Below are positions 23,845 to 58,578 of a stretch of 64,000 nt of DNA, one piece after another; position 1 is the stretch's first letter; every line of letters starts with the position of its first letter. Source of the stretch: Euprymna scolopes (Eukaryota); the NCBI GenBank assembly GCA_053919585.1, contig CM132795.1; one strand, given 5' to 3'. The position numbers and the translations under genes are program-made. The notes under the pieces are model-generated. The model had not been told where the DNA came from, did no database searches, and saw only the letters and a program-made list of their open reading frames with translations.

Positions 23845-26230
23845 TTGCTTTGAAAAGTATGAATGGAGTCATTATGGGTGAGAAAAAAAAAAAGAAACTG
23901 GAAATTGTAGAGACAGATCGACTAAAAAAAAGAATTATAGGTAAAAAAAAAAAATCGAACAAAAAAGGATCCATACGAAATTTCGTGTGTAAACAAAAAA
24001 TAAAATTAAGGGATCTAGAGGTTAACCTTTCGACCGACACTTTTCAATAGATCTCGTCGGTAAGTTGCATTAAATTAACGAATGAGAATGGAAAAAGGGG
24101 AGGAGATGAAGTCGAGGAAAAAAAATATATATATAATTAAGAAAATCCGTTGTCTACAAATAAGTAGACAAAACAGAAAAACCAGCGTACGTGTAGACTT
24201 TTATTTTTTTTTATTTTTATTTTTTTCTTTAAATAACTCTCATTTATGTGAAATTTCTTTTTTTTTTGTCTACATAAAGCTGGTTTGCGCATCAGCACAC
24301 TGACGGCCTCCAAGATGTTGAGGTGCTGTTTGTTCCGAGCTTTATGTAAAATGCGAGAACATTCATCAGAATATGCTTGGCCACAAGTTTTATTTTCGTA
24401 CAAATGAACACCAATTGACGATTCGAGAACTGGTGGTCGTCCGGATGTATTCCGTAAAGGCCCGGATGTATTCCTTAAAGGCCCGGATGATATAAAAAGC
24501 TTGCGTAAATACCCAGGAACGTGTTCTGCCACTCTGACCCCTAAACGTTGAAAAGTTCGACCCACGTAGTCAGCATCGCACCGACATCTAAACTCATATT
24601 ATTAAACTATTTTGTAGCGTGGGAAGTACATCTTTTTTAAACGCTGGGAAGGCAGTTTTGATACACAGCACTACTCGGGGTTGCACCGCGTAAAAAGAGT
24701 GGGGAAACAACCGAAGTGATCTTGCTAACAAAAACCCTACTAATTGAACCTATGTAGGGGAGCTTCAAATAAACCGGACATTTAGCCGGACCGGAAAGAG
24801 GCTTAGTGTTAAAACTAGTAAGTTTTTGGCGAATATGCTTAGAAATTATACCACCAGGGAAACCATTTTTAATAAGCATGTCCGGTATTTTAAGTTCCTC
24901 AAGTTTGCTTGGCGAGCATATCATGAGTGCACGGTGGACCAAGGTCTTTAACTTATCTTCCTGTTCATAGGGGCAAAGGAATCCCAACTAATATACAACC
25001 CTGTAAAGGTAGGTTTCCTGTATATAGTTGTATTAAACCGATTCCCTATCCTTTCTACAAGGACATCCAAAAAGGGTAAAGAGTAATTCTGCTCTTCCTC
25101 CATAGTAAACTTAAGTGCCGGGTGGAGACTGTTTAATTTCAGAAAAAAATCACTTCATGGCGGCACTTGAAAATGACAAGTGTCATCTACATAACGCCAA
25201 TAACGAACAGGTCTAGAAACCTGAGTAAACAATAAGCATTCCTGAAAGCCTAAGAAAATATTGGCCAGGATAGGACCCAAAGGACTACCCATGGCCACAC
25301 CATCTACCTGTTGATACATTACGTCATTAAAGCTAAAACAGACCGACTTGGTAGCTAGTTCCATGAATTCAAGGAAAATATTCTCCGGAAAATCCGGAGG
25401 GGTTAATGTACTATGATAGAGCATATCCGAACAAATTTGAATAGTTTCATCAAGGAGTATATTAGTGAAAAGATTGGTAACGTCGAAAGAACATAGGAAA
25501 GTTGTTTCTGAATTCAAATCAAGTCCACGCATAGTGGCAGCGAAACGAAAAGAATCCGCAATGCAGTTACCCGAGAATTCCTTTAGTACAGGCTCAAGAA
25601 TCTCTGACAACCATTTTGCCAGTTCATGCTGGGGTGAACCGATTATGGAAAGAATGGGTCTTAAAGGGACCTCGTTCTTGTGGATCTTTGGTAGCCCGTA
25701 CATTCTGGGTCGTTGTGAACCCACGGGCCGGATTCTATCATAAGTATCTTTACTAATAAATTTCCTCCTATGTATTTGAAGAAACCGTTTCTGGAGTTTT
25801 ACTTCAGTGTTCTAAGTGCTATCAACCGATGTGTCGCCAAGCCTTTTAAATTTGGATTTATCCTTTAAAATATCCAACATTTTTCTGATATAATCATTCG
25901 TATTAAGGATAACGACACCCGCACCTTTATCCGGCTTAGTGATGTAAATATCCTTATTAGTTTTAAGGAGTTTGGCGGCTTGATGGTGGATTTTAGTCCA
26001 TACAAACTCACGAGCATTGATAGGGGAGTTCGTGAACTTGTGCGCCAGTTCAGCTAACCTAGCCTTCATATACAAAAAATCCTCGTTGGAACGAGGCTCA
26101 TGATGTTTGAGCTGCGAGTTTAATATTTCGAATTCAGCAAAGGTACTTTCCCTATCGATCATTCGGGGGGGGATGCCGACATCCAACCCTCTGGCTAATA
26201 CAACTTTTTCGTTATGGGAAAGAGTGATAC
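23845..26230 (-). mobile_element. Penelope-like element 1 (Penelope/Poseidon type; RT + C-terminal GIY-YIG), 5'-truncated
   Basis: KPDKGAGVVIL, YGLPKIHK..PLRPI, SFDVTNLFT, GVAMGSPLGPILANIF, RYVDD, FLDV, YEF.CRCDADYVGRT..RL..RVAEH, LEA. Flanked by TA-rich microsatellites. Confidence 0.93.
24012..24062 (-). ncRNA. Minimal type I hammerhead ribozyme motif (U3-A8 core) in the PLE-1 terminal repeat
   Basis: Minus strand: accgac-ga-GATCTA-TTGAAAA-g-tgtcggt-c-GAAA-ggttaacc-TC-TAGATC. 6-bp stem I, palindromic stem III, CUC cleavage triplet, loop II complementary to upstream accgac. Confidence 0.8.
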
Positions 26231-26273
26231 CTGTTTATATATCTATATATATAGATATATATATATATATAGA

Positions 26274-26315
<42 letters not shown>

Positions 26316-26339
26316 ATCTCACTTATTGAATATATTAAA

Positions 26340-27265
26340 TTGGTCCCCTGACTTATCAGAAAGGGATCTGTTTTCAGTTGCACCCGTTCGTCCGGACGAT
26401 TGCCAGATAGCCATCCATTAGGTTTTTCTGAAATTTTTTAAAAATTCAATTTCATTAAATAGATGTGCACACTAATATTTTTTTTTTTTTTTTTTTTTTT
26501 TTTCTTTCCTCAAATTCTCGTGTCCCTATGGCACTCAAGAGGCCAAAAATGAAGTTTTGCGGCATAACTTTTGATCCATAAGATTTTTTTTTTTTTACTT
26601 GGCCAAAATGTAAAGCCCATTGTTAATATATATCTATTATGAGTGACCCTGGCAAAATTCTATTTTGCATCTCTGGGGACGTCTAGTGCTAAAAACACCC
26701 TTTTTGTGGCTTTTTTTTTCATATTTCTCAAACTTGATATGCATGTTCAACTCAAATATAGATGTTAAGGCCTGAAAATGCACGGTTATCCATTTACACT
26801 GGGATTCGGCGTCCACAAGGGCTCAAAATATGTCAAGAAAATGCCTCAAAATGACGCTTTTTGCCCCATAGCATTTGATCCATCCATTAGATTTTCCTGA
26901 AACTTGACCGAAATGTGGAGGCCATTGTTCTTAAAAGTTCTGGTTCGCATCCCTCTGGGACTTTTAGTGCTTAAAAACATGCCGTTTTGGAACTTTTTTT
27001 CATATTACTCAAACTTTTTCTATATAGTGCTTTTCCATGGTGCGGAATTCAAATATGTCTTAAAGCGTAAAACTGCACCATTTGTCCATTTACACTAGGA
27101 TTCAGCGTTACCAGGAGCTCAAGACGTCAGAAATGTCCCAACATGTCAAAAAATGACACTTTTTACCCTATAACTTTTGCCCCATCCATTAGATTTTTCT
27201 GAAACTTGGCGAAAATGTGAAAGGAACACTGGCCTTTCACACTTCTCATTCATTTCTTCATTTTT

Positions 27266-27297
<32 letters not shown>

Positions 27298-27333
27298 CAG
27301 CACCATAGGGGGACCACGCATGCGCAGCTTGTT
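26340..27333. mobile_element. Helentron-associated (HINE/DINE-1-like) non-autonomous element with ~300-bp internal repeats
   Basis: Subterminal inverted repeats ggtcccct (26342) / agggggacc (27307), a ccgttcgtcc motif near the left end, TT flanks, and three internal units (cata.c.tttga.ccat...gattttt..gaaactt). Confidence 0.6.
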
Positions 27334-28084
27334 ATTGGTCACTATTACATGCATAATAGCAATGTCATTGCTGTTAAAACTTCGATATTTGGGTAGTTTT
27401 AATTAATGCTACTAGTATTTGGAGTTTGATTATCAGTGTTTAAAAGTATTTGAGCCTACAGTAACTATGGCCACTACATCAGCCAGTTCTTTCCTAAAGA
27501 AAATTAGGTTGTAAATGATCCATACCAAAACGAGTAAGCATGAATTTTGTTCAATAAAAGTCTATTAGAAACATAACTCACCAATGTAGATCAGTTATTT
27601 TATGGAAGTTGAAAATATTGTGAAGCTTATAAGAATCTATCATAAAATAAAAGCATTATGAATTAAATCACATTGAAAAAATTTCTGTCGATTCCATAAA
27701 TATTATTTGGATACTTTGTACTATTGTCCTCATCTTGAATGTTATTTTCACAATGTTTGGTCGATGTAACATCCAACTTTCTTCAGGGGAAATCTTTCTA
27801 CTGAACACTGCAATTTGCATGGAATTTCAAACAGAACTTTTTTATTTAATGCACGGGTGTACATATTTTCGATCTGTTCGACAGGAGTTGGTAGAAGTCC
27901 TAAATATTTCGCATTTGTATTTTGAGGATCGGACAAATATAGGATTGAATTTAAATTTTGAATTTGCAACAGAATCTTACAAAGTACTTTATAAACTACA
28001 AAACGGGTCCTTGTAACCACTTGTAGTACGAATATTTAGCCTTAAACCTGTTTCGAGATGCACCATCTTACAACTAATTATATA

Positions 28085-29100
28085 TACCTATTACATTATT
28101 TTTTGCGGGTAACAAAACTTTATTATAGCTATGAAAAATAAGAATGATTTTTTTTTTATCCATGATAAAAAGAACGGAGAGGAAATATTTAATGAAAGGA
28201 AAAAAATAGATAATGGGGTAAAGTCGGTCGATCAGGTTTTGCCCTCACTTTTCAAAAGCCAAATCGAGGTTTTTCTTTATTACTACAGGGAAACGAATTT
28301 AAACGTTGGCAGCGAATAAAATAAAATTATCGAGGTGAAGAGAAAGGAACGACTAAAATAAATCTATCGTTATATGGGGAGAAAACTCCTTAGAGACAAA
28401 TCACGTGGAAACCTAAAAGACAATCCTTCTGCTTAGAGAGGTCTCCTTAACCGGGTGTGAATAGTCTCCAAGACCTTAAAATGAAATAACGAGTGAGCGT
28501 GACTCGGGATAGAAAACGAGTCACTGCTGAAATTCATTGCACATCGCGGTTTAAACAAATGGTCAGTTATAGCGGAACCATATGTATTGCTCAAAATGTC
28601 CGTTGATTGGTAGATTTCATTCCGGATTTTACTAGGTACGTGTTGGACGCGGCTATCTAACCTGAGGGTTGTTCTGCCCATGTAGTTGGTACTGCAACTA
28701 CATTTAAATTGATAAATAACATTTATATGACGGGGGTGGGCAGAACGTCCTTTTGAGGGGACGGCAATAATGGTTTGTCGTAAACACCACACGTACATTA
28801 GAAGCAAAATAGCAATGTTCTATAGCTGAGTTGATGTTTGGCGAATTTTGCAATTACTATCTCTAACCAAGGTAAACGAATGTAAAGTGGACATTTAGCT
28901 GCCATCTTAGACTTTATTTGGGAAAAATTATTTTCCTTTTTATGACGGAGTTAATCACATCAAGAGGGTACCCATTATTGGACAAAGTATTAGTAATCAT
29001 TTTTATTTCTTCATCCAATTTAGATTGTGAACAAATCGTGAGGGCACGATGTGTTAAGGTCCAAATCAAATTATCGTTAGGCAAAATGAATCTCGCGTTG
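28085..29100 (-). mobile_element. Penelope-like element 2, 3' fragment (thumb + GIY-YIG + terminal repeat)
   Basis: LTHRALTICS....NGYP; VIYQFKCSCSTNYMGRTT.RL..RVQHVP; LET. Confidence 0.88.
28223..28270 (-). ncRNA. Degenerate hammerhead motif (U3-A8 core, G12 mutated)
   Basis: Minus strand: cctcg-at-ttggctt-TTGAAAA-g-tgaggg-c-aAAA-cctga-TC-gaccga. Same position in the element and same architecture as the 24012 motif; probably inactive. Confidence 0.5.
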
Positions 29101-29908
29101 TATACAACCTATTTATTACTACATATCTAGTAATATTGCGACACTTCCTATTATATTTGCATTCTTTGAACTACTGTTCTCATCTTTGGTCGATTCAACC
29201 TCCTTTCCTTGGCAATCAATTCTCATGTAAAAGTGAAACATAGTATTGAAGTTCTCAGCTAAGATTTAGAACATTTTTGATATAAAAGATAAAAACGATA
29301 TTCATCTGAATAATAACTCGTAAAATTGGATGGTTTCTCTCAACTTGGTTGGATGCCATTAAATCTCTTGATCAATACTGCAATACTTCATAGGTTTTCA
29401 TTGTTGGTCTGATTTATTCATCAAATATAAAGCGATAATAATTCATCTCAATGCGGGAGTTATTGCATAAATACTTGTTACTTGATATGACAAGATTTTC
29501 ATTTAAACAAATCTGACTTTATCTCTTATTTGTCAGAAACAAAAAAACAGGACAAATTAATTTCAGAAAATCAAATGTTAAAACTTGACTTTTTCGCATA
29601 AAGTATTTTCTTACACTTCTGTTTGATTCATTTCCACAATAAAATGGAAGATATAAAATAAAATATGAAATTAAGTTTAATGTAGAAAATAATGAAAATA
29701 TTATGATTTATTAAACCTTTCAACATTTTTCGCGCCACACTTTACTCCAAATGTTACTTCATTTAAATATCTTCCTGTGAATAAGTCATTAGTATGGGCT
29801 CCTCATTTTATCCATTTTGGCATAAGTTTCTACTAATGGGTCTGGAGACTGGTATTACCGACTATTGAACTCCAAAGACACACACACACACACACACACA
29901 CACGCATA

Positions 29909-32900
29909 TAGTTCTGGTCAAAATCATAAGACCACTTAAGTAAGCGTTTATGCATATTATCTAATTTTTAATCAAACAAATGGTTGAAACCATTGCCAAA
30001 AGGGAAAATCTGATGGAAAAAAAAAAATGTACTTGTACTTGAAATGACATTCACCCTGGAGGAGTTGAGTCGGCTTCATGAAGATGCACATCTCGTATAG
30101 CTGCGGCCCAAGCCCGACGATCGGACGCATGATCCCGAGTGAACAACAGCCAGTCACGTCTCCAACGAGACAGGCTATAGATGAGCGGGCCCGAAATAAG
30201 CTCAGCGTCGGCTTTGATAGTCCCGAGCCACGTTCTTAGCTGGCCACCGACACGTTTTTTCCAGCCAGGTAGAGGACGTGGGGAGATAGCCTCGTGGATT
30301 AAGACCCCTGCATCACAGCGAGAGGCATGGCCGAACCATCGAAGGCGTCGGGCCCGCAGTAGGTCAGTAATTGCCTGAAGATTGCAGCGACGCTGGACTT
30401 CTTTGTTGGCGACGAAATCCAGGGGATGGACATGGAGAATGCGGCGGAGATTGTAGTGGTCGAAAACTTCTACGCGTCGCAGATCCGCTTTCCGTATGGG
30501 CCAGGTCTCGCATCCATACAAAAGTATTGAGCGGACGAGGGCCTGGTAGATTCGTATTTTTGTCCTCAGACGTATTTCAGGCCGTGACCATAATCGCCTT
30601 TGGAGTCGACAAAAGGCAGTTCGTGCGGCATCAATGCGCGTTTCAATCTCATTCATGCCTTGACCGGTACCAATGAACGTGCAGCCCAGGTATTTGAAGC
30701 TATCCGTCTCCTCGAGGGTTTCCCCGTTGAGAGTGACGGAGGACCTTTCTGCTTGGGGGATGCCAGCCGATAGAATCTTCGTCTTGCTGGCGTTGATTCT
30801 CATGCCGATGGCAGCTGCCTTCTCCTGGATTCGGTTCAGCACCGTCTGTATGTCTCTGTAGCTCTCCCCGAGAACCGCAATATCGTCCATGTAGTCCAAA
30901 TCAGTGAGATGAAAGTTACGCCCTACCACGACGCCAGGATATCCAGGCAGCGCCTGCTCCATGATCCAATCAATAGCGTAATTGAAAAGGGTGGGCGAGA
31001 GCGCGCATCCCTGGCGGACACCACTGCTGACGTTGAAGAAAGAGGAGTCCTGGCCATAACAGCGGACACGCGTGCGAGTCCGATGGTAGTAGGCCTTGAT
31101 CAAGTTGAGTGGCTTCGGGGGGATACCATCTGCTTCCATCACTCTCCACAGGGTACCGCGGTCGACAGTCAAAAGCGGCAGCGAAGTCGATAAAGCATAC
31201 GATTGTACGTTGTTGGTAGCACCAGCGCTGTTCCAAGGCTCGCCTCAGCGTAAATACTTGGTCGACGCATCCGCGGCCAGGTCGGAATCCGCATTGGTTA
31301 GGACGAGTCCTTCTGTCCCTTTCGTATTGAAACTGTCTCAGAATGAGGATAGTGAAGACTTTGGCAGCGACATCTATAAGGCTGATGCCTCTGTAGTTAC
31401 TACATGTCCGTTTGTCACCCTTCTTAAAAAGGGGAAGAAGAATGGCGTCACTCCAATCTTGGGGAATCTCCCCACTATTCCAAATCTCAGAAATCAGCTG
31501 GTGTAGGCGAGGGGTTAATTCATCGATTCCGGTCTTGTAGACCTCAGCCGGGATACCGTCCTCGCCTGGAGCTTTGTTATTCTTCAACTTGGCAATGACG
31601 GCTCTGATTTCTTCATGGCTGGAGGTATCCGACGAGCAATCGTAGAGATCTGCAGCAGTGGGGGTGTTTTGACCTGGTATTGTAGGTGGAGTCTGATGGT
31701 TCAGGAGTTCACGGAAGTGCTCGTGCCACCGATCCAATTGTGCGTTTAGCTCGGTAATGATTTCACCTCCACTGCTGTGGATGGATTCGCTCACGGATGA
31801 CCTCGTCTGTGTGCTGGACTTCAATAGTTGATATAACTTGCAGGAGTCCCCTACCGAGGCCGCATATTCCATGTCAGTTGCAATATTGTGCCAGTAAACA
31901 TTGCGGGCAGAGTGCGTTGTTTCTCGGCAAAGGCGACGATAGTTGGCATCTCCGTTGAGTCTGGCACGTTTAGCCTCCTCACCCAATTTCACCGTTCGAC
32001 TTGAGATCCAGTCCTTTTGACAAAGTTTTGTGAAACCCACGGTGTTGGCCGCTGCTTCAGTGACGTCCTTTTTGAGTGCTTTCCATATTTCTTCCACCGA
32101 TTCTTCTGGTTGTAAACCATTGAATCGGTTGCGTAGGTCCAGTCTAAACTGAGTCGCAGTGTCGTCTACTTTCAGCTTCGTGATATCAAGACGTTTTTGA
32201 CGGGAAACGTGTTAGTTGGCCTTCAGTCGCATTGTGAGCTTGGCTATAACAGGGACATGATCCGATCCATGGGTATTTCCTGTTTCAGCACCTCTGTAAG
32301 CGCGGCAGTCACGCATATTGCTTACCCAGCGTTTGCATATCAAAATGTAATCTATCTGGTTCGCCGTGACACCGTCATTCGAGTACCACGTCACCAGATG
32401 ATTTGGATGCTGAAACTTCGTATTGGAGACAATGAGGTGATTGTTCAGATGAGACGTTTGCCATTGGCACAGCTATTCCCGACGCCAAATGGGCCCAGCG
32501 TAGATCTTGTTTGAGCATCCGCCTTGCCAGTTCTGCCATTCCAATCACCTGCTATGACAAACATGTCGCCGGCGGCGGTTCCGTTGACGGCAGCTTGTAA
32601 TTCGTTGTTGAAGGTATCCTTTATAGCATCGGCTGAGTCTAGCGTGGGTGCATAGACTGCGATGACATACGTTGTGGATAACTCCTTTTAGCCGAATTCG
32701 GGCAAGACGAGGGGAAATGGGTTCCCAGTCCAAAAGATTTTTGGAAAAAAAATGAAATCTGCTTGATTCGAAACCTTAACCCTGGTCTAATAATTTTTTA
32801 AAAAACATTTTCACCTGATCAAAATAAGATCACTGATAATTTATCTAACAAAAGGCAATTATAAATTACTAAAAAGGGTCTCGGCATTTAGTATAGCCTC

Positions 32901-34165
32901 CATTATTACGAATTACTTCAAAAATTCTCTCGGCATATTTGCAACTAAGTTTATTAATTGCGAAGGAATTTTATCCCATCTACTGAAAACTGAATCAGAA
33001 AGTTCCTTTATCGAATCATACTGGGTTCCATCCTTGACCACTTCTTTGCCATCCATCCCCAAAGATTTTCAATTGGATTGAGGTCTGGAAAACATGCTGG
33101 ATGATCTAACAATTCTATATTATTTGAAAAGTATTCTCGTGCTTGTCGAGAAGTGTCTATAGCAGCGTTGTCTTGCTGGAAAATCCAATTTCTTCCACAC
33201 AGACGTGGACCTTCAGTCCTGATAGAAGCATTTTCAGGCATTGAAATGTACTTCAATGATGTTTGCCGGCCTTTCCCTGCTTACAACTTTAGGGTCCCAG
33301 CTGACGAAAGTACCCCAGATCATTAAAGACCCTCCTCCACTATGCCGAGTTGAAAAAGTCTTTGGGCAAATTTTTATCATGCCAATGGTGTTGAAATCCA
33401 TCTGGACCATCTCGATTAAACTTTTTCCCATTGGAGAAAATTACATTTTCCCAATTCTCTTCATCCCAAGTCTGGTATTTGGCAGCATATTTTAGTCGAT
33501 TAGTTTTGTGCTGTTCAAGAAGACGTGGTTTCTGCAGTCGCTTTGATTGAAACCCCCTTCATTTTCAGATGCCTTCTGATGGTTTTAGGACTACATTCTG
33601 CTGCTGTTTGGCTTTTCAATCGACTTGAGCTCATACTGGAGTTTTTTAACTTCTGATACAGCGATCCAGTGAGGGGGTTATATTTTTTTGGTCGACCTTG
33701 ACTCTTTTTCTGCCCAAATTGATCTGGATTTCTTAAATGTTACCGTTTTGCTACGATTCACTTCGTTTGCAATGGATCTATGGGAGAGTCCACCCCTATT
33801 AAGCTCAAAGATCCTTCCTCTCTCGAACTCTGATAATGGTTTCCCTTTTGCCATTTATAATTTAGTAAGATGTTTTTTTTTTTTTGTTTTTTTTTTAATC
33901 CACTTACAAGTTGCTTTTTGTAACATAGAAAGCTTTTCGTATTCATTTTTCAAAACTAGCCGATTTTATTAAATTGGTCTTATTATTTTGACCAGGTGAA
34001 AAATTTTGTTTTTTAAAAAATTAGATCAGGGTTAAGGTTTCGAATCAAGCAGATATTTTTCCATATTTTCCCTTTTAGCAATGGTTTCAACCATTTGTTT
34101 GATTAAAACTTTGATATTATGCGTGAACGCTTACTGAAGTGGTCTTATGATTTTGGCCAGGACTA
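29909..34165 (-). mobile_element. Tc1/Tc3-like DNA transposon with ~200-bp TIRs; left TIR split by an RTE insertion
   Basis: TIRs (29909-30028 + 32742-32833) versus 33975-34165, each with inner and outer direct repeats (g.tcaaaat..taaga.c). Transposase from MAKGKPLSEFERGRI (33854) through KKFN.DGPDG, WIFQQDNAAI and PDLNPIENLWG. TA flanks. Confidence 0.92.
30029..32735 (-). mobile_element. RTE-clade LINE, relatively young, 5'-truncated
   Basis: Long ORFs 30970-32097 and 30051-31172 with KAPGEDGIP, NYRGISL, FIDFAAAFD, GVRQGCALSP, LRWFGH; APE end NQIDYIL/GSDH; (CAAGTA)n tail; tggaaaaaaaatg duplicated at both sides. Confidence 0.95.
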
Positions 34166-34199
34166 ATATATATATATATATATATAATATATATATATA

Positions 34200-35150
34200 T
34201 ATTGATGTACAAACTTTTAGTTTTAAAAAGTATAAATGGAGTCATTAGAATTTTGGAGAAAATCGATGCAGGGAGAAAAATACACTAAAAATAGCCAAGA
34301 CTATTCGACTAAAATAATAAAGAACCTCGAGGTATTTTTCGTCCGACACTTATCAAGAGATTACGTCGGCAGCGATTAAAATAAAACAATTTACACAATT
34401 GAAAAATGGAGGGGTGAAACCAAAACAATAAATAAAACTACACGGTGAATTAAATGAATGAATAACCAGTGATATATCGTCCATATTTCAGAACCTAGGA
34501 CAAAATTTTAAAAAGTTGCCTGCAAATAAGTGCAGAAACAAATGACGCAATGTAGGCATATTTTCCCGGTAAATCACCTCTTTAAACAGGTCTAATTTAT
34601 GCAGCGGCTCCTTTTGCCTACAGAGCGATGGTTTGCGCATTAGTACAGTTACGGTTTCCAAAATATTGATGCTTGGAACGAACCTTGTATTACAATAAAA
34701 CATGTGAAGCATATTAGGATTGCTGTTTTCGCATTGTACACAAGTGCGCACCAACTGATGACTCATGAATCGGTGAGCGCCCGGATGTGCTCCGTAAATA
34801 CCCAGAAGTGTTCTGTGAACGCCTGGTTGTGTTCAATGTTTTTATTCTAGACCTTCTGGACTTTTGAAAACACGCAGGGACATGTTGTGCCAATCTGCCT
34901 CCCAGCCGTTAAAACGTACGACCCACATAGTCAGCATCATTATGACATTTAAATTGACATATAACTAAACTTTTTTGTAGTGTGGGAAGTGTATCTTTCT
35001 TAAAAGCTGGGAAGGCAGTTTTAGTGCCGAACACCGCACGAGGCTGCACCGCATAGAAACAGTGAGATACAACAGAGGTAAGAGTGGGGAGAACGGACTT
35101 GACCAAGGAAGTTTATTAATCCCATTTTTATTCAAATGTGGTCGCCCTAG
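34200..35150 (-). mobile_element. Penelope-like element 3, 3' fragment related to PLE-1
   Basis: VICQFKCHNDADYVGRTF; LETVTVLMRKPSLCRQKE; terminal region similar to 23845-24062; abuts (TA)n at 34165-34202. Confidence 0.88.
34323..34369 (-). ncRNA. Minimal hammerhead motif (U3-A8 core) in the PLE-3 terminal repeat
   Basis: Minus strand: ccgac-gt-AATCTC-TTGATAA-g-tgtcgga-c-GAAA-aatacc-TC-GAGGTT. Stem I shows compensatory changes relative to the 24012 copy; stem III is decayed. Confidence 0.72.
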
Positions 35151-35159
35151 CAGAGGAGT

Positions 35160-39190: not shown

Positions 39191-39199
39191 TTTGGTTTA

Positions 39200-47539: not shown

Positions 47540-47800
47540 CTATATATGGAAAATAGATTGGGGGTGGAAGGATCTGAATGCTCAACGTTTCGTCCAATTT
47601 ATGCGGGCTTCTTTGAGAGGGTCAGAAGATTTGGGTGGAGGAGCCGCATGTTTTTTTATGTAAATTAGATGCCTATATAGATTTTATCAGGGAAAATAAT
47701 AAATTAGCGTAGTGATTTGAAAGATTACGTCTAAAAATAGTCATAAAATAAATATGTTGATAAAATGATAAATTAATTGGGCTAAAATATCAGATTTAAA
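47540..47800 (-). repeat. Solo Penelope-type terminal repeat with degenerate hammerhead
   Basis: Reverse complement aligns to 55735-55895; contains ctc-tcaaagaa-gcccg-cataaat-tggac-GAAA-cg-TT-gag. Confidence 0.7.
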
Positions 47801-47820
47801 AGATTGCATCCGGAAATATA

Positions 47821-48640: not shown

Positions 48641-48645
48641 GTCAA

Positions 48646-49512
48646 TCTAGAACCCCATCTTCCAACGTAGACCTGGTGCTACCAGATCAGGCTGCCTATT
48701 GGCTTTCTGAGACGAAATGCACATACATCGATTTCTGTTTTTGTTTTCTACTCTATTTTGTAAAACTTATGTTCTACAAAAACAAAACAAAATAAACAGC
48801 CCCTTCCCTCCCCTTTTTTCTTTCCCTACTTCCCGGTCCTGGATATGTCCTTAAACTATATCTGATGGTGAGGTCCTAGTTTGCGGGCTTTGGGGAGCGT
48901 GGAGTCACCCTTTAATTGCCATTGCTCCCAGGTCCACTCTGACCTGGAGTGGTAGTACCTGTTAGGGTCCCAACTATGGGTTAAATAGAAAGAAAAAAAT
49001 ACATTCTATTAAAAAACTATTCTTCAAAATCTGGTCAGATTCCACTTTACCCAGTGGTCCTGGATATGCCCTTAAACTATATCCGATGGTGAAGCCCCAG
49101 CTTGTGGGCTTTGGAGTGTGGAGCCACCCCTTAATTGCCATTGTTCCCAGGTCTATTCTGACCCAGAGTGGTAGTACCTGTTAGGGTCCCAACTATGGGT
49201 TAAATAGAAACTTTTTAAAAAAAAAAAAAAAAATCAAATGTTCTATTAAACTTTTTCTTCAAAATCACTGGATCGGCATTAAATGACCTAGAAAAGGTTG
49301 ATATGCCGTAAAACAATCAATCCAACGTAGACCCCTACTACCATGTCTCCTTCAACATCAGGAATCTACGTTCCAACATTCCAGAGGTTGAAACTGAATT
49401 ACAGGAGATGAAACCGGACATATTCTTTCTCAGCGAAACTGGAATAGGGCCGACCACTTCCCTAGATGAGTTCATAATTAACGGATACTCCAACTAAACA
49501 TCTAAATCTGAT
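48646..49512 (+). mobile_element. 5' fragment of the same LINE family as 1-1765, split by an insertion
   Basis: 48646-48673 and 49321-49512 match the reverse complement of ~1565-1762 (NIRNLRSN...LSETG APE start). Confidence 0.85.
48674..49320 (+). mobile_element. Composite insertion: ~160 bp unrelated leader + two tandem SINE-like units, 13-bp TSD
   Basis: TSD tccaacgtagacc at 48661-48673 and 49321-49333; SINE units begin at 48835 and 49056. Confidence 0.85.
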
Positions 49513-50159
49513 TTATTTTACTACAATCGCCAGTTTTTTTTATATGGGAATTGCTGATTGTGCCGAATAATGGGGTTAGTTTTGCGATGGTTCGTGATAT
49601 CTTATGGGTGACGCTGCTAATGCCAGAGATGATGGGCGTATTGGATTGCTATTTTTGTTTTTTAGGTAGACCATATAAGGTCGGAATTTTGGAATGATAT
49701 TCTATATAGGTAGTCCATATTTTAATTTCTGTAAAACCTAAATAAGACAGGTATTCAAATAACAAAACTAACCTCTTTAACAATTAGGGATCTAACACGT
49801 AAAATTATGACTAATACCAACACTAATATCTAGGCCGAAATATATTCCATACCCTACCTTGTTTGTGGAACAATATACGTAGAAACACAATGTAATTTTA
49901 AAAGAATATATGAACACGAGAGATGTGAAAAACAATGACCTCAAAGCTATATTTTGTCACATAGAGAACGACCACCATTTTAATTTTAACAAAGCGACTT
50001 TCCTTAAAGACATAACATATCTGCACGACGTTTGAGTCAACTATAACCTCCCAATCCCGCAATATACTTAAACAAAGGGGTTTTCCCATGTTGCTCACTA
50101 TCTGTCGAAAATAATTATTGAAGAGAATAACTTAGATATAGGTTACACATTATATATAT

Positions 50160-50892
50160 ACTAGCAAAAGTACCGGCCGTTGATTGGGTTCAAAAACAGC
50201 CTACAGAAAATGGACTCTGATTTAGGAAAGTATGATAGGTTATGAAAAGGAAGGGCTGTAAAGAGATAGTTTCGAATTTGGGGGCGGGTATCAAAACCAA
50301 AGCAAAATATGATGAAAGTAAAAATAAAATAGATAAACGCCATAATTTATTATACCATACCTGTTCATACTGAAACACTTATCACAATATTCTGTGGATC
50401 TATATTAAAAAAAACTTGTTAAACTTTGTGACATATCTCTATTCTATGGAGGTCAGGCGCGAACGAACGCCCCATAATTTTATAATACCATATTTCTTAA
50501 AATTGAAACATAATTATCAAAGAATACTTACGCAGATAGATATGAAGTTTTTATTAAAGTTTGTGCCTATTTCCACTCTATGGAGGCCAACCACGAACGC
50601 AGACCCCACAATTTTATTATGCCATCCCTATTTAAGTTAAAACATACTTATCAAAGTATTATGTACATCTATATGAAAAACATTGGTAAACGTTTTTTAA
50701 TTTTTAAATTTATTTCCATACTTTGTCGACCAGGCGCAAACGCAGACCTCACAATTTTAATGAACCACCGTTCTGCCAGATCACATATCCATTCCTGTGT
50801 CTCGATACATCTATCATTATGTGATCGTTTTTCTATAATAGTCACCCATATAGGAGCCTATTCGTGACAAGACAGAGCTTTGTATATATAGT
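50160..50892 (-). mobile_element. Non-autonomous Helitron-like element with three internal repeats
   Basis: actagc terminus with subterminal ccggccgttg; three cgaacg.a.acc.ca.aatttt units (50455, 50590, 50735); homologous to 10500-10660. Confidence 0.65.
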
Positions 50893-51019
50893 GATTGTCA
50901 CTTCTTGACAGAAGACCATCTTTCTCTTGTTTTATTGTTGACTCATTCATTTTCATGTATTTTTGAAATTTTTTAAAAATTTATATACACATATATACAC
51001 TTATACATATATACATGTG

Positions 51020-54000
51020 GAGATGTGATCAAGATATATCAATTCCTATTTTCTGTGGGAACGAAGGTGGCTCCTCAGATCAGCCCTGCTATTACAATCT
51101 GTTGCAAAGGTCATACTTAAGCTGAGATTGAGGGATGCCAACTGGTGCTGCTCTACTGTGGAGGCTCATATGACGCTTCAGACCTCCACTCGATTTACAG
51201 ACTACAGAGCAAACAGAACATCTGTACCCTGCAATGTTTTCCCCATCAAAGATTGATCTCCATGTGAACGGGTAAAGTCATTTTATCACATAAATCAAGT
51301 GTGGTTCTGCATGAAATCCTCCAACAGACCTGATATATCTGACATTTTCTTCCGGATATCACACTTCATTTTTGCATGCTCATATTTTTTCTTAAAACTA
51401 TCACAGCCATGATAGACCAAGGAGCGCCACTTTTTAGGATCATTGGAAGCACTTTCCCAACTGGACACGTCAATACCAACAGCTTTAAGATTATCTTTGT
51501 TTTCCTTAAAGCGTTTCCTCGGTTTATATTGTGGATGCTTTCCTTGTGTAATTTCACCATAGAACAGGCGCTTTGGCAATCTATTGTCGTCCATCCTTGT
51601 CAGATGTCCAGCCCACCTTATCTCGATATAAGGTTTGTCAGCTCGCATAAGAACTTCCATATCAGGTATAAAAGTGCTCCACCTGATGCCAGAATGTCTC
51701 TGGAATTTCTGGTGCACTCTCTCCATGACTTTTGTGTCTACCATAAGTTGTCCAGGCCTCAGAAGCGTAAAGCAGGGATTGTAAAATACAAGACTGATAG
51801 ACACTGATCTTTGTATGAATAGTTATACCCCTGTCAGACCATACTCGCTTCTCTAAGCCACCAAAAGCCTTAGTGGCAGGCTGTATCCTATAGTTGACCT
51901 CAGCATCCAGGGTTCCATCTCTGGCTAGAGTACTACCCAAACACACAAATGTGTCAATCACGGCAAGTCTCTGGTTGTTGACAAATATTTGGTTCCACAT
52001 AAAAACTACCGCGGGGAGGTGTGAACATGACCTTAGTCTTAAGACAAATAGTAAGCCCAAAAGACGCACAGGCCCCCGAAAACAGATCCATGATACCCTG
52101 CATATCCATCTCACCATGGGCCACAAGATCGGCGTCATCCGCATAAAGCAATTCACAAACCAGGTGCTGAAAGGTCCTTGTAAAAGCATAAAAACGACGA
52201 AGATCAAAGACCCTGCCTGTGGTTCTGAAATGCAAATAAACACGTAGAGAACATTCCCTAAAGGCATACGATAACATAGTTGCAAAATAAATTGAAAAAG
52301 TGTAGGTGCTAGGATATCACTCTGCTTCACATCATTGTCAACCGAGATGGGTTCTGATGGGCATCCGTTGAAGTTCAGACGAGCCTTCATATTTGTGTGG
52401 AGCTCCCTGAGTAATCATAGAAATTGAGGTGGACATCCCAACTTCCCCATAATTATCCATAGGGCACTTCTGTTCACCGTATCAAAAGACTTAGTCAAAT
52501 CAACCAAACCCTGATAAAGAGGAACATGGTGTCCAGTACATTTCTCCTGCAACTTCCGAGCAGATATCATGTCTGTGGTTCCTCTGCCCGAACAAAAGCC
52601 ACTTTGGCTTTCTGGAATGACGGATGGACAAATATACTTTAACAATCTATTGAGTAGAACTCTGGAAAATACTTTGCCAACTGCTTCCAACAAATTTATC
52701 CCACGATAACTTCCACAGTCGGTCCTAGAGCCCCTTTCTCTTGTACAGTGATAGAAGAATTGCATCAACCCAATCCTGATGGACGGGAACACCCCTCCAG
52801 ACATCGGTGATAAGATGAAGAATTTCATGAACAAGTTTATCACCCCCATGTAAGAGGACTTCCACAGGAATACCATCAAGCCCTGGAGCCCTCCCAACGT
52901 TCACTTTCTTGATTGCATCTCTAATTTCATTCTCGGATGGGAACACAGAAATTTCATGGATAAGCTTCTGTTGTGATTAAAATTCATTGATGACGTCTTC
53001 ATCGACATTAGAGGGGTTGTAAAAGAGATCAGAATAATGCTCGGTCCAACGAAGGAGCATCTTGTTAGGATCCTTTATAAGGGCAATCCCATCACTTGAG
53101 AGTAGGGGAGATGTAGAGTGTTTGAGGACAAATCTTTAAGCAAATGGTACATGCGTTTGAGGTCTTTACAATTAAGTCATCTGGATTTGGTTGGCGACTT
53201 TAGCCCACCACTAATTCATTTGGTGGAGTCGCTTTTGGAAAATACCCTTGTTTGCTTTAAGTGACTGTTGGGGGGACTCTCTACCTCCATGACAGGCAGA
53301 CATCTTATGATGCAACTCATTTTTAGCACTTAAGAGTTGAGTAATTTCAGAATCATTATCATCAAACCATTCCTGATGTTTAGATTTGCAGAAGCCAAGA
53401 ACATCCTTACTTATTTCATAGATTGTATTTTTAAAATACGCCTACGAGCCATCAAAATCAGCAGAATTAACTACGGATCAAAGCTTTTCACATACACTTG
53501 GATCATCCAGCCTGGACACATCAACCTGCCTGGGAATCCCAACACCACCAAACCTACACTTCCTCCTTATACAGATTTTCAATTTCCCACGTACCAAAAA
53601 GTGATCTGTGCCGCATTCAGCTCCACACATAACCTGCACGCTACAAATCTGCCTTCCTGGAAATAATGTAATCAATTGACCTTGTTTATAAGCCTCTTTG
53701 TTGCTGAAGAAAGTGTTACAAGGTCAAACTGAGTGCATAGATGAACATGCAGACCATTACTGTTGACCCTACCTTGACCAAACCGGCCGAGTGAGTCCCA
53801 GGTGTGATGATCCTTGCCAACCCTTGCATTTAGATCACCCATGAGTAAGATCTCAGATAAAGGAATAGAGGAAATGGTACGACTGAGATCTTGGTAAAAC
53901 GCTGTGATGGTATCTTCATGACCCATGGTAGGGGCATATACAGATAAAATCGTCATATACCTACTGTGTGCAAGAGGGAAGCGCATCATAATTCTGCCAC

Positions 54001-55337
54001 TTACACAAATCCCCTTCACCAAATCAGAACGCACAGCAAAGCCAATTCAACCTTCTCAGCCCCGATGGTTTTCTTGTCTCGGCCCAATGGTTTTCCTTTC
54101 CAAGAATGGTGTATCCAGAGCCCACTTCCACCAATTGATCCTCACCACTCAATCGTGTTTCAAACAATGCCGCAATTTTTATGCTGTACCTAGTGAGCTC
54201 TCTTGCAACAATAGCTGTCCTACGCTCAGGTCTATCACTATCCAGGACATCTAGCAAAGTTCTCACATTCCACATAGCAACAGTTAGGTTATTCCTCTCT
54301 TGATAAAATTTTGATTTTCCTTGTTTATTTTTCTTCAACTTTATCTTGTTTCTCCTGCAAATATAGAGCAGCCACCGACCACAGGAAGCCGACCAGCTAA
54401 TAAAAAGGTAGACAATTTATAGGTCACCTTTTCTAGACCCTTCCCAAATTTATGGGTGAGCAGTGTATCCCTAGAAAAAACTGCTCAGCCGCCAGATCAC
54501 CCCCAAAGTTGCTTCCATCCTGTAAGCGATTTAGTCGATGTTAGATAAATCACTGGCCGCCTATTTGCAGCAACGTACTTCCAGCCCGTTAGGCCCTGTC
54601 GGTTGAGCATTAGAATACGCCGACTGCCCCCCTGCAGAGGGTAGAAGTCCCCCAATGGGGGTCCTGGATATGACCTTAAACTATATCCAGTGGTGAGGCC
54701 CCACCTTGTGGGCTTTGGGGAGTGTGGAGCAACCCTTTAATTACCATTGTTCCCAGGTGTACTCTGACCCGGAGTGGTAGTACCTGTTAGGGTCCCAACT
54801 ATGGGTTAAATAGAATCTGACGTAAAAAAATATACTCCATTAAAAATCGTTCCTCTAAATAACTAGATTCGGCATTAAATAACCTGAAAAAGGTTGATAT
54901 GCCGTAAAACAATCAATCAACCAACCAACCAATCCAGCCCATTAAGCCTGTGCACGTCGTCACTCACCTATCGCCATAGGACTTTTTTTGTTTCTTCGAA
55001 AGATATCTGCACATAACGATCGCGACACAACCTGCTTGTACTACACATTGTATCCTCTCGCACCCTACCACTGGTTGCAGTGACAAACTGAAATAGTGAG
55101 ATGACTGAGCAGTGGCATAGTGTGAATATTTTCTCACGCGGTTTTAACCTCTCCAGCAGCTGGACATATATATATGTTTGCTTATGTGTATGTGTGTATA
55201 TCTCCCTAGTTCTCACAATATAGTAACCCTCCAGAACTTGAGATGGAGGCTAACAGGTACTATACCTTGTCCAAGGGTGACCTGAAACTATGCAAGGCAG
55301 AGGCGTTCATCTCCCTGGGGTAGTAGGTATACCCGCA
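51020..55337 (-). mobile_element. Near full-length decayed RTE (BovB-like) LINE including 5' UTR
   Basis: WNVRTL, LMGDLNARVG, CGTDH (APE); RAPGLDGIP, YRGINLL, VDLTKSFDTV, LLYADD, RWAGH...RLPK.LFYGE (RT); structured 5' UTR (ctgagcag...ctgctca; ctagaaaaggtgacct); starts beside (TA)n. Confidence 0.92.
54592..54932 (+). mobile_element. Longest SINE-like copy, nested in the RTE 5' UTR
   Basis: Imperfect TSD tccagcccRtta at 54580-54591 and 54933-54944; ~65-bp extra 5' head relative to the other copies; (CAAY)n tail. Confidence 0.9.
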
Positions 55338-55341
55338 TACA

Positions 55342-55389
<48 letters not shown>

Positions 55390-55393
<4 letters not shown>

Positions 55394-55922
55394 CATTCGT
55401 AATTTCACTTCATTTTTTTTTAATTTACTGTATTTTATTTTACCACTGTCTATTTTTAGACGCCATCTTTCAAGTTACTACGCTATGTTATCCCAATTCA
55501 ATTTTCTCTAATTTTTAAAAACTCCCTGCATAATCTCGCTTCATTTTATATTTTTATTTATTAAATCTATCAGTTATATTTGCGGACGCAATCTTTTAAA
55601 TCTCTATATTTTAGCCCAGTTAATTTTCTCATCTGAGTTTATCAATTTATTTTATTACATTATTTTTAGAAGAAATCATTCAAATCGCTACGCTAGTTTA
55701 CTCCAATTTATTTTCTCTAATCATAGAATATATGTATATAGGCATCTAATTTACAGAAAGAAAACATGCTGCCCCCCCATCATTATATATATCCCCAAAT
55801 CTTCCGACCCTCGTCAATGACTATCCCTCTTGAAAAAGTCCGCATAAATCGGGCGAAACGTTGAGCATTCAGGTCCTTCCAATCTATTTTTCATATCGGA
55901 TTTTATCCATCTTAAAAACGAT
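55390..55922 (+). repeat. Solo Penelope-type terminal repeat between (TA)n tracts
   Basis: Homologous to 47540-47800 (inverted); contains a hammerhead motif; flanked by (TA)n on both sides. Confidence 0.65.
55827..55865 (+). ncRNA. Type I hammerhead motif with 5-bp stem II and U3-A8 core
   Basis: CTC-TTGAAAA-a-GTCCG-cataaat-CGGGC-GAAA-cg-TT-GAG; palindromic minimal stem III (ACGU). Confidence 0.65.
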
Positions 55923-55950
55923 CATATATATATATATATAATATATATAT

Positions 55951-58578
55951 ATTGCGGAGTACAAAATTTTATTATGGCTATGTAAAGACTAAATTCAAAC
56001 TTGTTTAAAAACATTATTTTAGATTGTGAAATTAAAAAATAAAAATGAATGTGTCAGCTGACCGGTTTCGAAGCTCGCTCAACAGAGCTAAAATCGAGCT
56101 TAATTACGTTTTAAAAAGAAAAGGGGGGAACAATGAATCTGAGATGAAAAAGTAGGGGGGAATATATGTATAAAAAAAGGGGGATTAATTATTAAATAGA
56201 AACTAAGATTCTTTTTGTTTGCAAAGAGGTCTCAGTCTTGATATAGTTTCTAGAATTTTGAGATGGTAAAGAGTGCGACTTACTAAGGATGGAAAAAAAG
56301 TCAGCACAAAATTCAAAGCACAAATACGATTATTTATAAGGTGCTCTCATAGAGGAGCCATGGGTATTGTTCAAAACGTCCGAAGGTAGGTAGTTTCCAT
56401 TTCGAATTTTGGAGGGAACATGTTGTTTTACCCTATTATCTAATCTTTGAGACGTCCGCCCGACGTAGCGCACACCGCAGCTACATTTAAATAAATAACT
56501 AATAGAATGTTATGGTGGGGGGGGGAGAACGTCTTTACAAATTGAAGACAAAATGGGTTTACAAGAAAAAACACGAGTATTTGATGCAAAATAACATTGT
56601 TGTATGACAGAAGAAATTTGCTTGGCAAATCTTTCACTAACATCACCTAGCCAAGGTAGGCGTAGGTAGATAGGGCATTTGTCGACAGATGTCCGTTTAA
56701 TTTTATTGAAATTAGAAATTTTATTTTTAATTGTAGATTTCACGATTTGCAATGGAAAACCATTATTGCAAAGAGTCTTGGTAATAAATTTGACTTCATT
56801 TAATTTATCTGAACATATCATACAAGCTCTATGGATAAGGGTGTTAAGATGTTTTTGTTTGGTGGGGCAAAAAGAGTCCCAACGTGTGTAAAGACTAGTG
56901 AATGTAGGTTTACGGTAGATGGAAGTACATCTAGAAAAGGAAGGGAAGAATTACTTTCCTTTTCTATAGTAAATTTTAGAACTGGGTGAATATTATTAGG
57001 GGATGCAAAAAAGGTATCTGCTTCCGTTTCATTCTTGAACAGACAAAAAGTGTCAACATAATGAAAATAAATATCTGGTTTTTGAAAGCCAGATAAAAGA
57101 CTCTTTTCGTGGAAACCTACGAAAATATTTGCCAGAGCTGGTCTCGGGAGAACCCATCGAAACACCATTTATCCGCCTGTACATAATGTTATTAAAACTG
57201 AATTCGACCGATATGGTGGCGAATTCCATAAGTTCCACAAAAATATTCTCAGGAAAAAGGGGAGTTGGGAGTTGACTGCGATAAAGGGTATCGGCACATA
57301 TCAAGTCTCTTAGAGTGGAACGCAGGTAAATAGGCTTTCAATATCAAAAGAACACAAATTTGTCAGTCTGAGTATAATTCTGCATAAATTTAGCAAAAGA
57401 AAAAGAATCTTTAATGCAGAAAGAACTATACTCTTCCAAAACTGGTTCTAAAATATTAGTAAGCTATTTGGCTACTTTGTTGGGCGGAACCTATCATGGA
57501 TAATATCGGTCTTAAAGGTAACCAACTCTTATGGGTTTTAGGTAAACCATAGAGACGGGGACGTAATGAACCAGTCGGTCTGATTAAATCAGAAATGGAA
57601 GAATAAAGAGCTCCACTCTTCACCCATTTAACCAGACGTTTTTGGAATCAAGATTGAATAGATACAGTAGAGTCGTGTGTCTCTACCGGACCTAGCTGTT
57701 CAAATTTAGAGGTGTCATTGAGAATTGTCATCATTTTATTGATATAATCCTGGTGGTCAAGTATAACACCAGAGCCTTTGTCCGGTTTAGTGATAGTAAG
57801 AAATTTATTCTAGCGTAGTGTTTTGATAACATGGAAATGTTCATTACGCCATTTGGATTCACTAAACGAGACGTGTGTACCTGCATATGAATGAGAAATA
57901 TCATTAAATTTCGCCTTAAGGTCACTAACCTTACTGTCGGAAACAGGGGAAAGTGTTGCTAATTGAGCAAAAAAGACTTCGAATTCAGAATAAATCTCTT
58001 CACGTTTGGGGTTAGAAGGGGGAATGCAGAAGTCCAACCCATGTGAAAGTATATTCAATTCGGGTTGGGACAACTGCGGGGAAGAGATATTAAGGATATT
58101 TCTAGAAATATCCGGGCTAGTCGAGCAACCATATTTTTTTAATATTAAATGTTGCAATTTATTCTGAGGTTTTGACTTCAACCTGGAAAGGCTGCGTTCG
58201 TGTATTCTTGCAACATAACGAATAAATTGTATTTTATCAAACAAGGATAAACTGCCTACATAATTTCTCCATAATTCAGAGTACTTCTTTCTCAAGTACG
58301 CCAGATCGCAAGAAAGTTTAGACAAAAAATTGGAGATAAATGCATCTTCAATCTTTTGTCCAGGATGTAAATTAGCTCTTTATTTTAAAAAAAAAAAAGA
58401 GGGACAGACTTTATTGCTCTGGCACATATATAAAAAGGATTGGTTATTCTGCATAGTTCTTATTTTACTCCTATTTTCAACAATGAATTTAATCAAAACC
58501 GGTCAGCTGACACATTCATTTTTAATTTCACAATCTAAAATGTTTTCGAACAAGTTTAAATTTAGTCTTTACATGGCC

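What the first reader, a model, noticed from the sequence alone, without database searches (positions are those of the whole stretch)
24012..56101. Covarying pseudoknot on minimal hammerhead ribozymes in four Penelope terminal repeats
Seen: all four PLEs carry, at the same place downstream of the endonuclease, a hammerhead with helix II reduced to about one G-C pair. In each, the loop is complementary to a strand 2-3 nt 5' of stem I, and the paired sequences differ between families: accgac/gtcggt (24012-24062), ccgac/gtcgg (34323-34369), cctcg/tgagg (28223-28270), aagctcg/cgagctt (56054-56101). Established: PLEs encode minimal type I hammerheads with palindromic stem III that can cleave as dimers, and natural hammerheads need a loop II-stem I tertiary contact. 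Inference: here a 5-7-bp Watson-Crick pseudoknot supplies that contact, defining a structural subclass. I cannot check whether it is already described.
Basis: partly seen in the sequence, partly recalled or inferred. Interest (0 to 1): 0.8.

Follow-up and report, generated by a model that had tools for sequence, protein, structure and literature searches.

The report
Split-helix pseudoknot hammerhead in Penelope retroelements
Four decayed Penelope-like retrotransposon copies carry a small hammerhead ribozyme motif whose usual second hairpin is replaced by one G-C pair plus a 7-base loop that pairs with a strand just upstream; relatives from about a dozen other sources show the same pairing with compensating changes, so it looks like a real, lineage-specific variant of a known ribozyme.

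Summary
All four sites lie 75-250 nt downstream of GIY-YIG endonuclease remnants of decayed Penelope-like elements (PLEs). Each has a hammerhead core, then G, a 6-7-nt loop, C and GAAA. The loop is complementary to a 7-nt strand 1-4 nt upstream of stem I.

Only copies A and D keep a complete fold. B and C have lost stem I/III, and every copy deviates in the core (U3-A8; G12A in C; A6U in D).

I found the same architecture in 19 further copies from about 11 other sources, nine of the 23 copies having a canonical CUGANGA core. On a 19-sequence alignment:
- 92% of cells pair, against 24-48% in slid registers.
- 5 of 7 pseudoknot pairs show changes on both sides.

All carriers form one clade in the RT tree (support 98), nested among PLEs with the published long-helix-II minimal hammerhead.

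The helix most likely stacks on G10.1-C11.1 and so rebuilds a 7-8-bp helix II while tethering stem I. Stem III is a loopless palindrome, which implies dimers.

Watson-Crick pseudoknots, including one with a 1-bp stem II, were shown for other hammerheads in 2011. Reviews describe PLE hammerheads as lacking tertiary contacts. My rating is a new variant of a known kind; cleavage activity is untested.

The parts
24012..24061 (-). Copy A hammerhead, complete fold. P5 24061-24055; linker 24054; stem I 5' strand 24053-24048; core UUGAAAA 24047-24041; G10.1 24040; loop 24039-24033; C11.1 24032; GAAA 24031-24028; palindromic stem III 24027-20; U16.1 and C17 24019-18; stem I 3' strand 24017-12.
   Evidence: The covariance model scores it 42.1 bits.
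24137..26222 (-). Copy A PLE body: RT and endonuclease ORF remnants, broken by stops and frameshifts.
   Evidence: RVT_1 match. YGLPKIHK and DKG motifs and tblastn links to copies C and D. The endonuclease piece is homologous to a GIY-YIG ORF.
34322..34370 (-). Copy B hammerhead remnant. P5, core UUGAUAA, G-loop-C and GAAA are intact. The stem III palindrome is interrupted by 2 nt and there is no stem I 3' strand.
   Evidence: The model scores it 42.1 bits.
34488..34965 (-). Copy B endonuclease-region remnants.
   Evidence: tblastn hits of pieces A1 and C1.
28237..28271 (-). Copy C hammerhead remnant. P5 CCUCG 28269-65; core UUGAAAA 28255-49; G; 6-nt loop 28247-42; C; AAAA (G12->A). The 3' half has decayed.
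   Evidence: The model scores it 27.4 bits.
28433..29090 (-). Copy C endonuclease and linker remnants.
   Evidence: Homology to a GIY-YIG ORF with E 2e-16.
56054..56101 (-). Copy D hammerhead, complete fold with a 7/7 Watson-Crick pseudoknot. The core CUGUUGA has U at position 6. Stem III is CCGG and the cleavage site is UC.
   Evidence: The model scores it 29.1 bits.
56267..58325 (-). Copy D PLE body: RT and endonuclease remnants with stops.
   Evidence: tblastn. It groups inside the variant clade in the RT tree.
58493..58616 (+). Inverted partial copy of D's 3' end. It begins at the GAAA of the hammerhead and ends in (TA)n.
   Evidence: blastn 78% identity over 149 nt; sequences.

Best explanation
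These are the 3'-UTR hammerhead motifs of one clade of canonical Penelope-like retroelements (RT followed by a C-terminal GIY-YIG endonuclease).

In this clade the usual 7-8-bp helix II hairpin is replaced by a single G10.1-C11.1 pair closing a 7-nt loop. Six to seven loop bases pair with a strand (P5) lying 1-4 nt upstream of stem I.

Inferred mechanism:
- The P5/loop helix stacks directly on G10.1-C11.1, because its last pair adjoins C11.1. This rebuilds a helix II of normal PLE length as an H-type pseudoknot.
- The first loop base (usually U) acts as a one-nucleotide bridge across the deep groove.
- The short P5-stem I linker holds stems I and II side by side, which is the role played by loop-loop contacts in other hammerheads.
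- Stem III is a loopless palindrome (AGCU, CCGG, AAGCUU, GGUUAACC and others), so two copies must pair to form it. Cleavage follows U16.1-H17 in a dimer, processing PLE transcripts.

What is shown: the motif, its position, the pairing and its covariation, and its restriction to one clade. What is inferred: coaxial stacking, dimer cleavage and biological role.

The window's own four copies are decayed relics. Copy A is the only one that might still be active.
For: - Same architecture in 23 parsed copies from the window plus about 11 other sources, 9 of them with a canonical C3/G8 core.
- Tool count on alignment A5: 92.4% of cells paired against 80.1% in shuffles (0/500). Six of 9 pairs change on both sides (2/500). 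Covariation score is 0.459 against 0.217 (0/500). Slid registers pair at 24-48%. In the pseudoknot helix, 5 of 7 pairs change on both sides; position 3 shows UA, CG, AU and GC.
- My own slide control: 147/161 cells paired at register 0 against 42-74 when slid.
- G-U pairs are far commoner than A-C (19 cells against 3), which points to pairing in the sense-strand RNA.
- Stem I covaries across lineages and stem III is always a perfect palindrome.
- The motif lies 100-250 nt after ORFs with Pfam GIY-YIG hits.
- All 15 carriers form one clade, SH-aLRT 98, nested among PLEs with a conventional long helix II.
- Precedent: a hammerhead with a 1-bp stem II plus a 6-bp pseudoknot depends on that pseudoknot (PMC3088659).
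Against: - No cleavage data exist for any member.
- Independent lineages are few. About 5 distinct pseudoknot sequences exist, and 11 copies share UCUGACG/UGUCAGA.
- The structure was derived from the same sequences on which it was counted.
- Thermodynamic folding alone is not significant (z from -1.3 to +1.1).
- No Rfam hammerhead model matches. The same is true of conventional PLE hammerheads.
- All four window copies carry core or stem defects.
- In vitro, a PLE hammerhead elsewhere needed the element's protein and was dispensable for insertion (PMC11167929).
Confidence: 0.78

Rival explanations
1. The P5/loop hairpin is real RNA structure but is not part of the catalytic fold. It could be a competing 'off' conformer that gates cleavage. 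It could instead be a recognition hairpin for the element's RT/endonuclease near the internal reverse-transcription start site.
For: - It is the strongest helix in nested MFE folds of A, D and L083.
- PLE proteins bind the 3' region, and the PAc hammerhead was protein-assisted and dispensable for insertion in vitro (PMC11167929).
Against: - The helix is compatible with stems I and III rather than exclusive of them.
- It abuts C11.1 with zero spacer and restores exactly the helix II length of conventional PLE hammerheads.
- Helix II would otherwise be a single base pair. Hammerheads tolerate that only with a compensating pseudoknot (PMC3088659).
Confidence: 0.12
2. The pairing forms in trans within the obligate dimer, with P5 of one copy pairing with the loop of the other. 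It would then be a second dimerisation interface rather than an intramolecular pseudoknot.
For: - Loopless palindromic stem III implies dimers.
- Head-to-head copy pairs occur in L023, L053, L083 and L085.
Against: - The short, conserved 1-4-nt tether to stem I fits an intramolecular arrangement.
- Covariation cannot distinguish cis from trans pairing.
Confidence: 0.08
3. The motif is a chance resemblance in AT-rich retroelement tails and has no function.
For: - The core pattern alone is at chance level in the window.
- The window copies have core defects.
Against: - The full descriptor never occurred in 300 simulated windows.
- The motif is conserved at the same place in about 11 other sources with canonical cores, covarying stem I and a covarying pseudoknot.
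Confidence: 0.02

Closest known systems
Minimal type I hammerheads of Penelope-like elements (Cervera & de la Pena 2014, PMC4209133; Lunse, Weinberg & Breaker 2017)
   Same: - Type I topology and location in the PLE 3' or pseudo-LTR region.
- Short stem I (5-6 bp).
- Loopless palindromic stem III, implying dimeric cleavage.
- U3-A8 core covariation, already reported there.
- A total helix II length of 7-8 bp.
   Different: - The published motifs have a contiguous 6-8-bp helix II hairpin, usually with an extra base after A9, and are described as lacking tertiary contacts.
- Here helix II is 1 bp plus a loop paired to an upstream strand.
- I saw the conventional form in the more distant PLE loci.
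[quoted passage not shown] 2011, PMC3088659)
   Same: - A single G10.1-C11.1 pair.
- A 6-bp Watson-Crick helix joining the stem I side to the stem II side.
- The pseudoknot was shown there to be essential, by disrupting and compensatory mutants.
   Different: - That ribozyme is a circular permutation from bacteria or metagenomes. The 3' tail after stem II pairs with loop I, and stem III is a stable hairpin, so it acts as a monomer.
- Here a 5' tail pairs with loop II, the host is a eukaryotic retroelement, and stem III needs a dimer.
Type-SGC non-circularly permuted hammerheads (PMC10085705)
   Same: One strand of stem I is joined to one strand of stem II by a linker of about 3 nt, and a helix brings stems I and II together.
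   Different: The order of the conserved blocks is permuted there. Here the block order is the ordinary type I order, and only the 5' strand of helix II is displaced.
Type III hammerheads of HDV-like circular RNAs, and a Drosophila pseudoobscura hammerhead, with loop 1-loop 2 pseudoknots (PMC7936874)
   Same: Watson-Crick pairing replaces the usual non-canonical loop-loop contact.
   Different: These are type III hammerheads with long helices I and II retained. The pseudoknot is an addition to helix II, not a substitute for it.

Membership tests
Hammerhead ribozyme | CUGANGA core strand | tested here: inconclusive
   Nine of the 23 parsed copies (eight from other sources plus window copy D) have C at position 3 and G at position 8; the eight relatives have a canonical CUGA[AUG]GA. 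In the window, A, B and C have UUGAWAA; U3-A8 is a paired variant reported in PLE hammerheads (PMC4209133). D has CUGUUGA, a U at the invariant A6.
Hammerhead ribozyme | GAAA strand preceded by C11.1, which pairs with G10.1 | tested here: met
   G-C in 15 of 19 sequences and G-U in 3. GAAA is present in A, B and D. C has AAAA (G12->A), which removes the general base.
Hammerhead ribozyme | Three helices around the core, and a cleavage site U16.1-H17 | tested here: met
   - Stem I is 5-6 bp and covaries across lineages.
- Stem III is a palindrome flanked by A15.1 and U16.1.
- H17 is U, C or A.
- These hold in 16 of 23 copies, including window A and D.
- Helix II is non-standard: 1 bp plus the pseudoknot.
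Hammerhead ribozyme | Self-cleavage | not testable with these tools
Hammerhead ribozyme | Match to a curated Rfam hammerhead model | tested here: not met
   There is no hit at E<=10 in the window or in relatives with canonical cores. This is uninformative, because conventional PLE minimal hammerheads are missed too.
Penelope-like element (canonical, C-terminal endonuclease) | PLE-type RT followed by a GIY-YIG endonuclease | tested here: met
   - RVT_1 hit plus YGLPKIHK and DKG motifs in copy A.
- More than 1,200 RT relatives.
- GIY-YIG above the Pfam cut-off in the ORFs of L083, L085 and L089, with window pieces homologous to them.
- The window ORFs themselves are broken.
Penelope-like element (canonical, C-terminal endonuclease) | Hammerhead inside pseudo-LTRs, or tandem or inverted copy arrangement | tested here: inconclusive
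   The window has no second repeat with a full motif. D has an inverted partial 3' end. Relatives L023, L053, L083 and L085 show head-to-head pairs.
Pseudoknot-stabilised hammerheads (Perreault 2011) | At least 4 Watson-Crick pairs linking the stem I side and the stem II side, supported by covariation | tested here: met
   The helix is 5-7 bp, and 5 of 7 pairs change on both sides. Pairing is 91% in this helix against 24-48% in slid registers.
Pseudoknot-stabilised hammerheads (Perreault 2011) | Cleavage rate depends on the pseudoknot | not testable with these tools
   This needs disrupting and compensatory mutants.

The most novel reading that the evidence does not exclude
One PLE clade, found in cnidarian and other invertebrate-associated assemblies, has rewired the hammerhead. 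The 5' strand of helix II has moved upstream of stem I. The result is a roughly 50-nt ribozyme whose helix II is an H-type pseudoknot that also tethers stem I.

This would be an undescribed natural hammerhead topology. It would contradict the view that PLE hammerheads lack tertiary stabilisation. It could also act as a switch, because availability of the upstream strand would gate cleavage.
Probability: 0.45. Interest if true: 0.6.

Novelty: new variant of a known kind. Interest (0 to 1): 0.47.

Why it matters
PLE hammerheads are numerous in animal genomes, but their role is still unclear. They are weakly active in vitro and are described as lacking tertiary contacts.

A clade in which helix II is rebuilt as a pseudoknot tied to stem I would show that selection maintains a pre-organised catalytic fold in at least some PLEs. 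It would give a very compact natural scaffold for ribozyme engineering. It would also supply a search descriptor for motifs that current descriptors and Rfam models miss.

Tried and rejected
- **Rfam.** Scans of the window and of relatives found no hammerhead. I rejected this as evidence either way once conventional PLE hammerheads were also missed.
- **Thermodynamic folding.** z-scores were not significant.
- **MAFFT alignments A3 and A4.** These misaligned the upstream strand because linker lengths differ. Trimming each sequence to start at P5 fixed this, giving A5.
- **Relatives of copies C and D.** The endonuclease piece of C found only two proteins, and no DNA was available for either. 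The endonuclease piece of A found one short contig.
- **Viral contigs.** No relatives.
- **Covariance model R1.** It models the pseudoknot as nested pairs, and I searched 620 kb with it. It found only copies already known, at 25 bits or more, against noise at 19 bits or less. No new lineages emerged.
- **Lunse et al. 2017 and Arkhipova et al. 2017.** Neither could be read.
- **Consensus or repaired sequences.** I built none.
Full report
**What is in the window**

All four sites read as hammerhead-like motifs on the minus strand. Written 5' to 3', each has:
- a 7-nt strand, which I call P5;
- a 1-4-nt linker;
- the 5' strand of stem I;
- a seven-base core;
- G, a 6-7-nt loop, then C;
- GAAA (AAAA in copy C).

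Copies A and D then continue with a palindrome, U-H, and the 3' strand of stem I.

Only nine bases separate the two core strands, so helix II can be no more than the G10.1-C11.1 pair. The loop is complementary to P5:
- A: ACCGACG with UGUCGGU (6 Watson-Crick pairs plus G-U).
- B: GCCGACG with UGUCGGA.
- C: CCUCG with UGAGG.
- D: AAGCUCG with CGAGCUU (7 of 7 Watson-Crick).

**Context**

The four motifs lie downstream of broken ORF pieces that are 30-63% identical to one another. These pieces carry PLE signatures (YGLPKIHK, DKG, GIY...YxGRT). The endonuclease pieces of A and C align to an ORF with a Pfam GIY-YIG hit. The elements are therefore four decayed, 5'-truncated PLE copies of different families.

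The long ORFs at 30051-32097 and 51295-54338 are unrelated LINE-type elements.

Only A and D keep a complete hammerhead fold.
- B has a 2-nt interruption in its stem III palindrome and no stem I partner.
- C has G12->A and a decayed 3' half.
- A, B and C have U3 and A8.
- D has U at position 6.

'Terminal repeat' is not verified, because no second repeat with a full motif exists in the window. D has an inverted partial 3' end at 58493-58616 that begins at the GAAA.

**Is it more than chance?**

The core pattern alone is not enriched: 3 hits against 1.56 expected. A 5-bp complement somewhere in an 18-nt upstream window is also common. The complete descriptor is different. It gives 2 hits in the window and none in 300 simulated windows.

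**Relatives**

An RT alignment retrieved 80 metagenome loci and 26 loci from contaminated MAGs. Eight large ENA or NCBI contigs were also fetched.

The same 'G-N7-C' architecture with an upstream complement appears in 19 further copies from about 11 sources. Of the 23 copies in all, nine have C at position 3 and G at position 8. Examples are L002, L083, L084, L085, L086 and a Xenia genome copy, L088.

More distant PLEs (37-47% RT identity) instead carry the published minimal hammerhead. That form has an extra base after A9, a 7-8-bp helix II hairpin, and a stem III of CG, CATG, AU or UA.

**Covariation**

I used a 19-sequence alignment whose register I checked by eye (A5). The pair-counting tool gave these results:
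- 92.4% of cells paired, against 80.1% in shuffles (0/500).
- Six of nine pairs with changes on both sides (2/500).
- Covariation score 0.459 against 0.217 (0/500).
- 24-48% pairing when partners are slid.

Within the pseudoknot, five of seven pairs change on both sides. Position 3 shows UA, CG, AU and GC.

My own slide control gave 147 of 161 cells paired at the true register, against 42-74 elsewhere.

G-U cells outnumber A-C cells 19 to 3, which favours pairing in the sense RNA.

Two caveats apply. Only about five distinct lineages contribute the variation. The structure was also derived from the same sequences on which it was counted.

Stem I covaries freely across lineages, and stem III is always a perfect loopless palindrome. 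The core pair at positions 3 and 8 is C-G in 7 sequences of alignment A5, U-A in 7 and U-G in 5, and is never unpaired. U3-A8 was already reported for PLE hammerheads (PMC4209133).

**Phylogeny**

On an RT tree, all 15 elements with the variant form one clade (SH-aLRT 98). The clade includes window A, window D and the Xenia copy, and it is nested among PLEs with the conventional motif.

For some loci the RT and the hammerhead are merely in the same locus and are not proven to belong to the same copy.

Linker length tracks subclades. It is 1-2 nt in the group containing A. It is 3-4 nt in L002, L083, L084 and D.

**How it probably works (inference)**

- The last pseudoknot pair adjoins C11.1 with no spacer, so the helix can stack on G10.1-C11.1.
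- This would give a composite helix II of 7-8 bp, the length reported for ordinary PLE hammerheads.
- The first loop base would then be a one-nucleotide bridge across the deep groove of a 6-7-bp helix. This is the classical H-type pseudoknot geometry (my own knowledge, not tested here).
- P5 leaves the distal end of this helix and enters the distal end of the 5-6-bp stem I after 1-4 nt. That holds stems I and II parallel.
- The loopless palindromic stem III requires a second copy, as established for PLE hammerheads (PMC4209133; PMC6765202).

**Comparison with the literature**

Perreault et al. 2011 showed Watson-Crick pseudoknots in about 40% of hammerheads of all three types. [quoted passage not shown] The principle is therefore known.

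Reviews written after the PLE papers still describe PLE hammerheads as lacking tertiary interactions (PMC6155905; PMC7761336). None of the 14 papers that mention Penelope-like elements, hammerhead and pseudoknot together describes this arrangement. I could not read Lunse et al. 2017.

Rfam 15 has no model that detects either this variant or the ordinary PLE motif.

**Verdict**

This is a real, clade-specific structural variant of the PLE hammerhead, and probably undescribed. It uses a known stabilising principle. Its activity is untested, and the four window copies are relics.

Noticed in passing
alignment A5, columns 18 and 23; window 24047/24042, 34356/34351, 28255/28250: The core pair at positions 3 and 8 runs C-G (7 sequences), U-G (5) and U-A (7), with no C-A or other mismatch. 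This looks like a stepwise compensatory path. U3-A8 was already reported in Schistosoma PLE hammerheads (PMC4209133).
   Followed up: partly
window 58493-58616 (+) against 56071-55923 (-): An inverted partial copy of element D's 3' end starts inside the hammerhead at GAAA, not at the cleavage site. Both copies end in (TA)n. This fits the inverted-truncated-copy and (TA)n-target habits described for PLEs.
   Followed up: partly
window 26213-26318, 55259-55403 and 55924-55952: (TA)n microsatellites abut the truncated 5' end of PLE copy A and the 3' end of copy D. They produce spurious weak miRNA-family hits in Rfam.
   Followed up: no
window 23163-23777 (-): A further PLE RT fragment lies just downstream of hammerhead A. 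It may be a nested or tandem remnant. No hammerhead was found downstream of it.
   Followed up: no
window 5599-5714 (+): There is a 5S rRNA match just above the Rfam threshold (43.4 bits against 38), with mismatches in the terminal helix. It may be a pseudogene or a 5S-derived repeat.
   Followed up: no
window 30051-32097 (-), 51295-54338 (-), 33008-33256 (-): Two LINE-type elements are present (RVT_1 with DUF6451; a weak Exo_endo_phos_2 hit with RVT_1), and a DDE_3 transposase fragment lies between PLE copies B and C. The region is a transposon graveyard.
   Followed up: no
L023 (4743- / 6702+), L053 (4266- / 6666+), L083 (9870- / 11621+), L085 (9495- / 11848+): In relatives the variant hammerheads occur as head-to-head inverted pairs about 2 kb apart, flanking the ORF. 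This would place two dimerisation-competent motifs on opposite strands rather than on one transcript.
   Followed up: no
loci L090-L115: PLE RT sequences with eukaryote-type hammerheads sit in contigs deposited as bacterial MAGs (Poribacteria, Stappiaceae, Bacteroidota and others). These are almost certainly host-genome contamination of the bins.
   Followed up: no
L001 (Logan SRR27666059 contig, 906 nt): This contig is 93% identical in protein to copy A's endonuclease region. It ends in an A-run just after the ORF and upstream of where the hammerhead would be. It could be a polyadenylated transcript or just the genomic A-rich stretch.
   Followed up: partly
L088 8625-8680 (-), Xenia sp. genome: This copy has a canonical core and an 8-nt loop. 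Its pseudoknot sequence is different again (GCACAC with GUCUGC) and has one central C-C mismatch. It is the most divergent member and branches at the base of the variant clade.
   Followed up: partly
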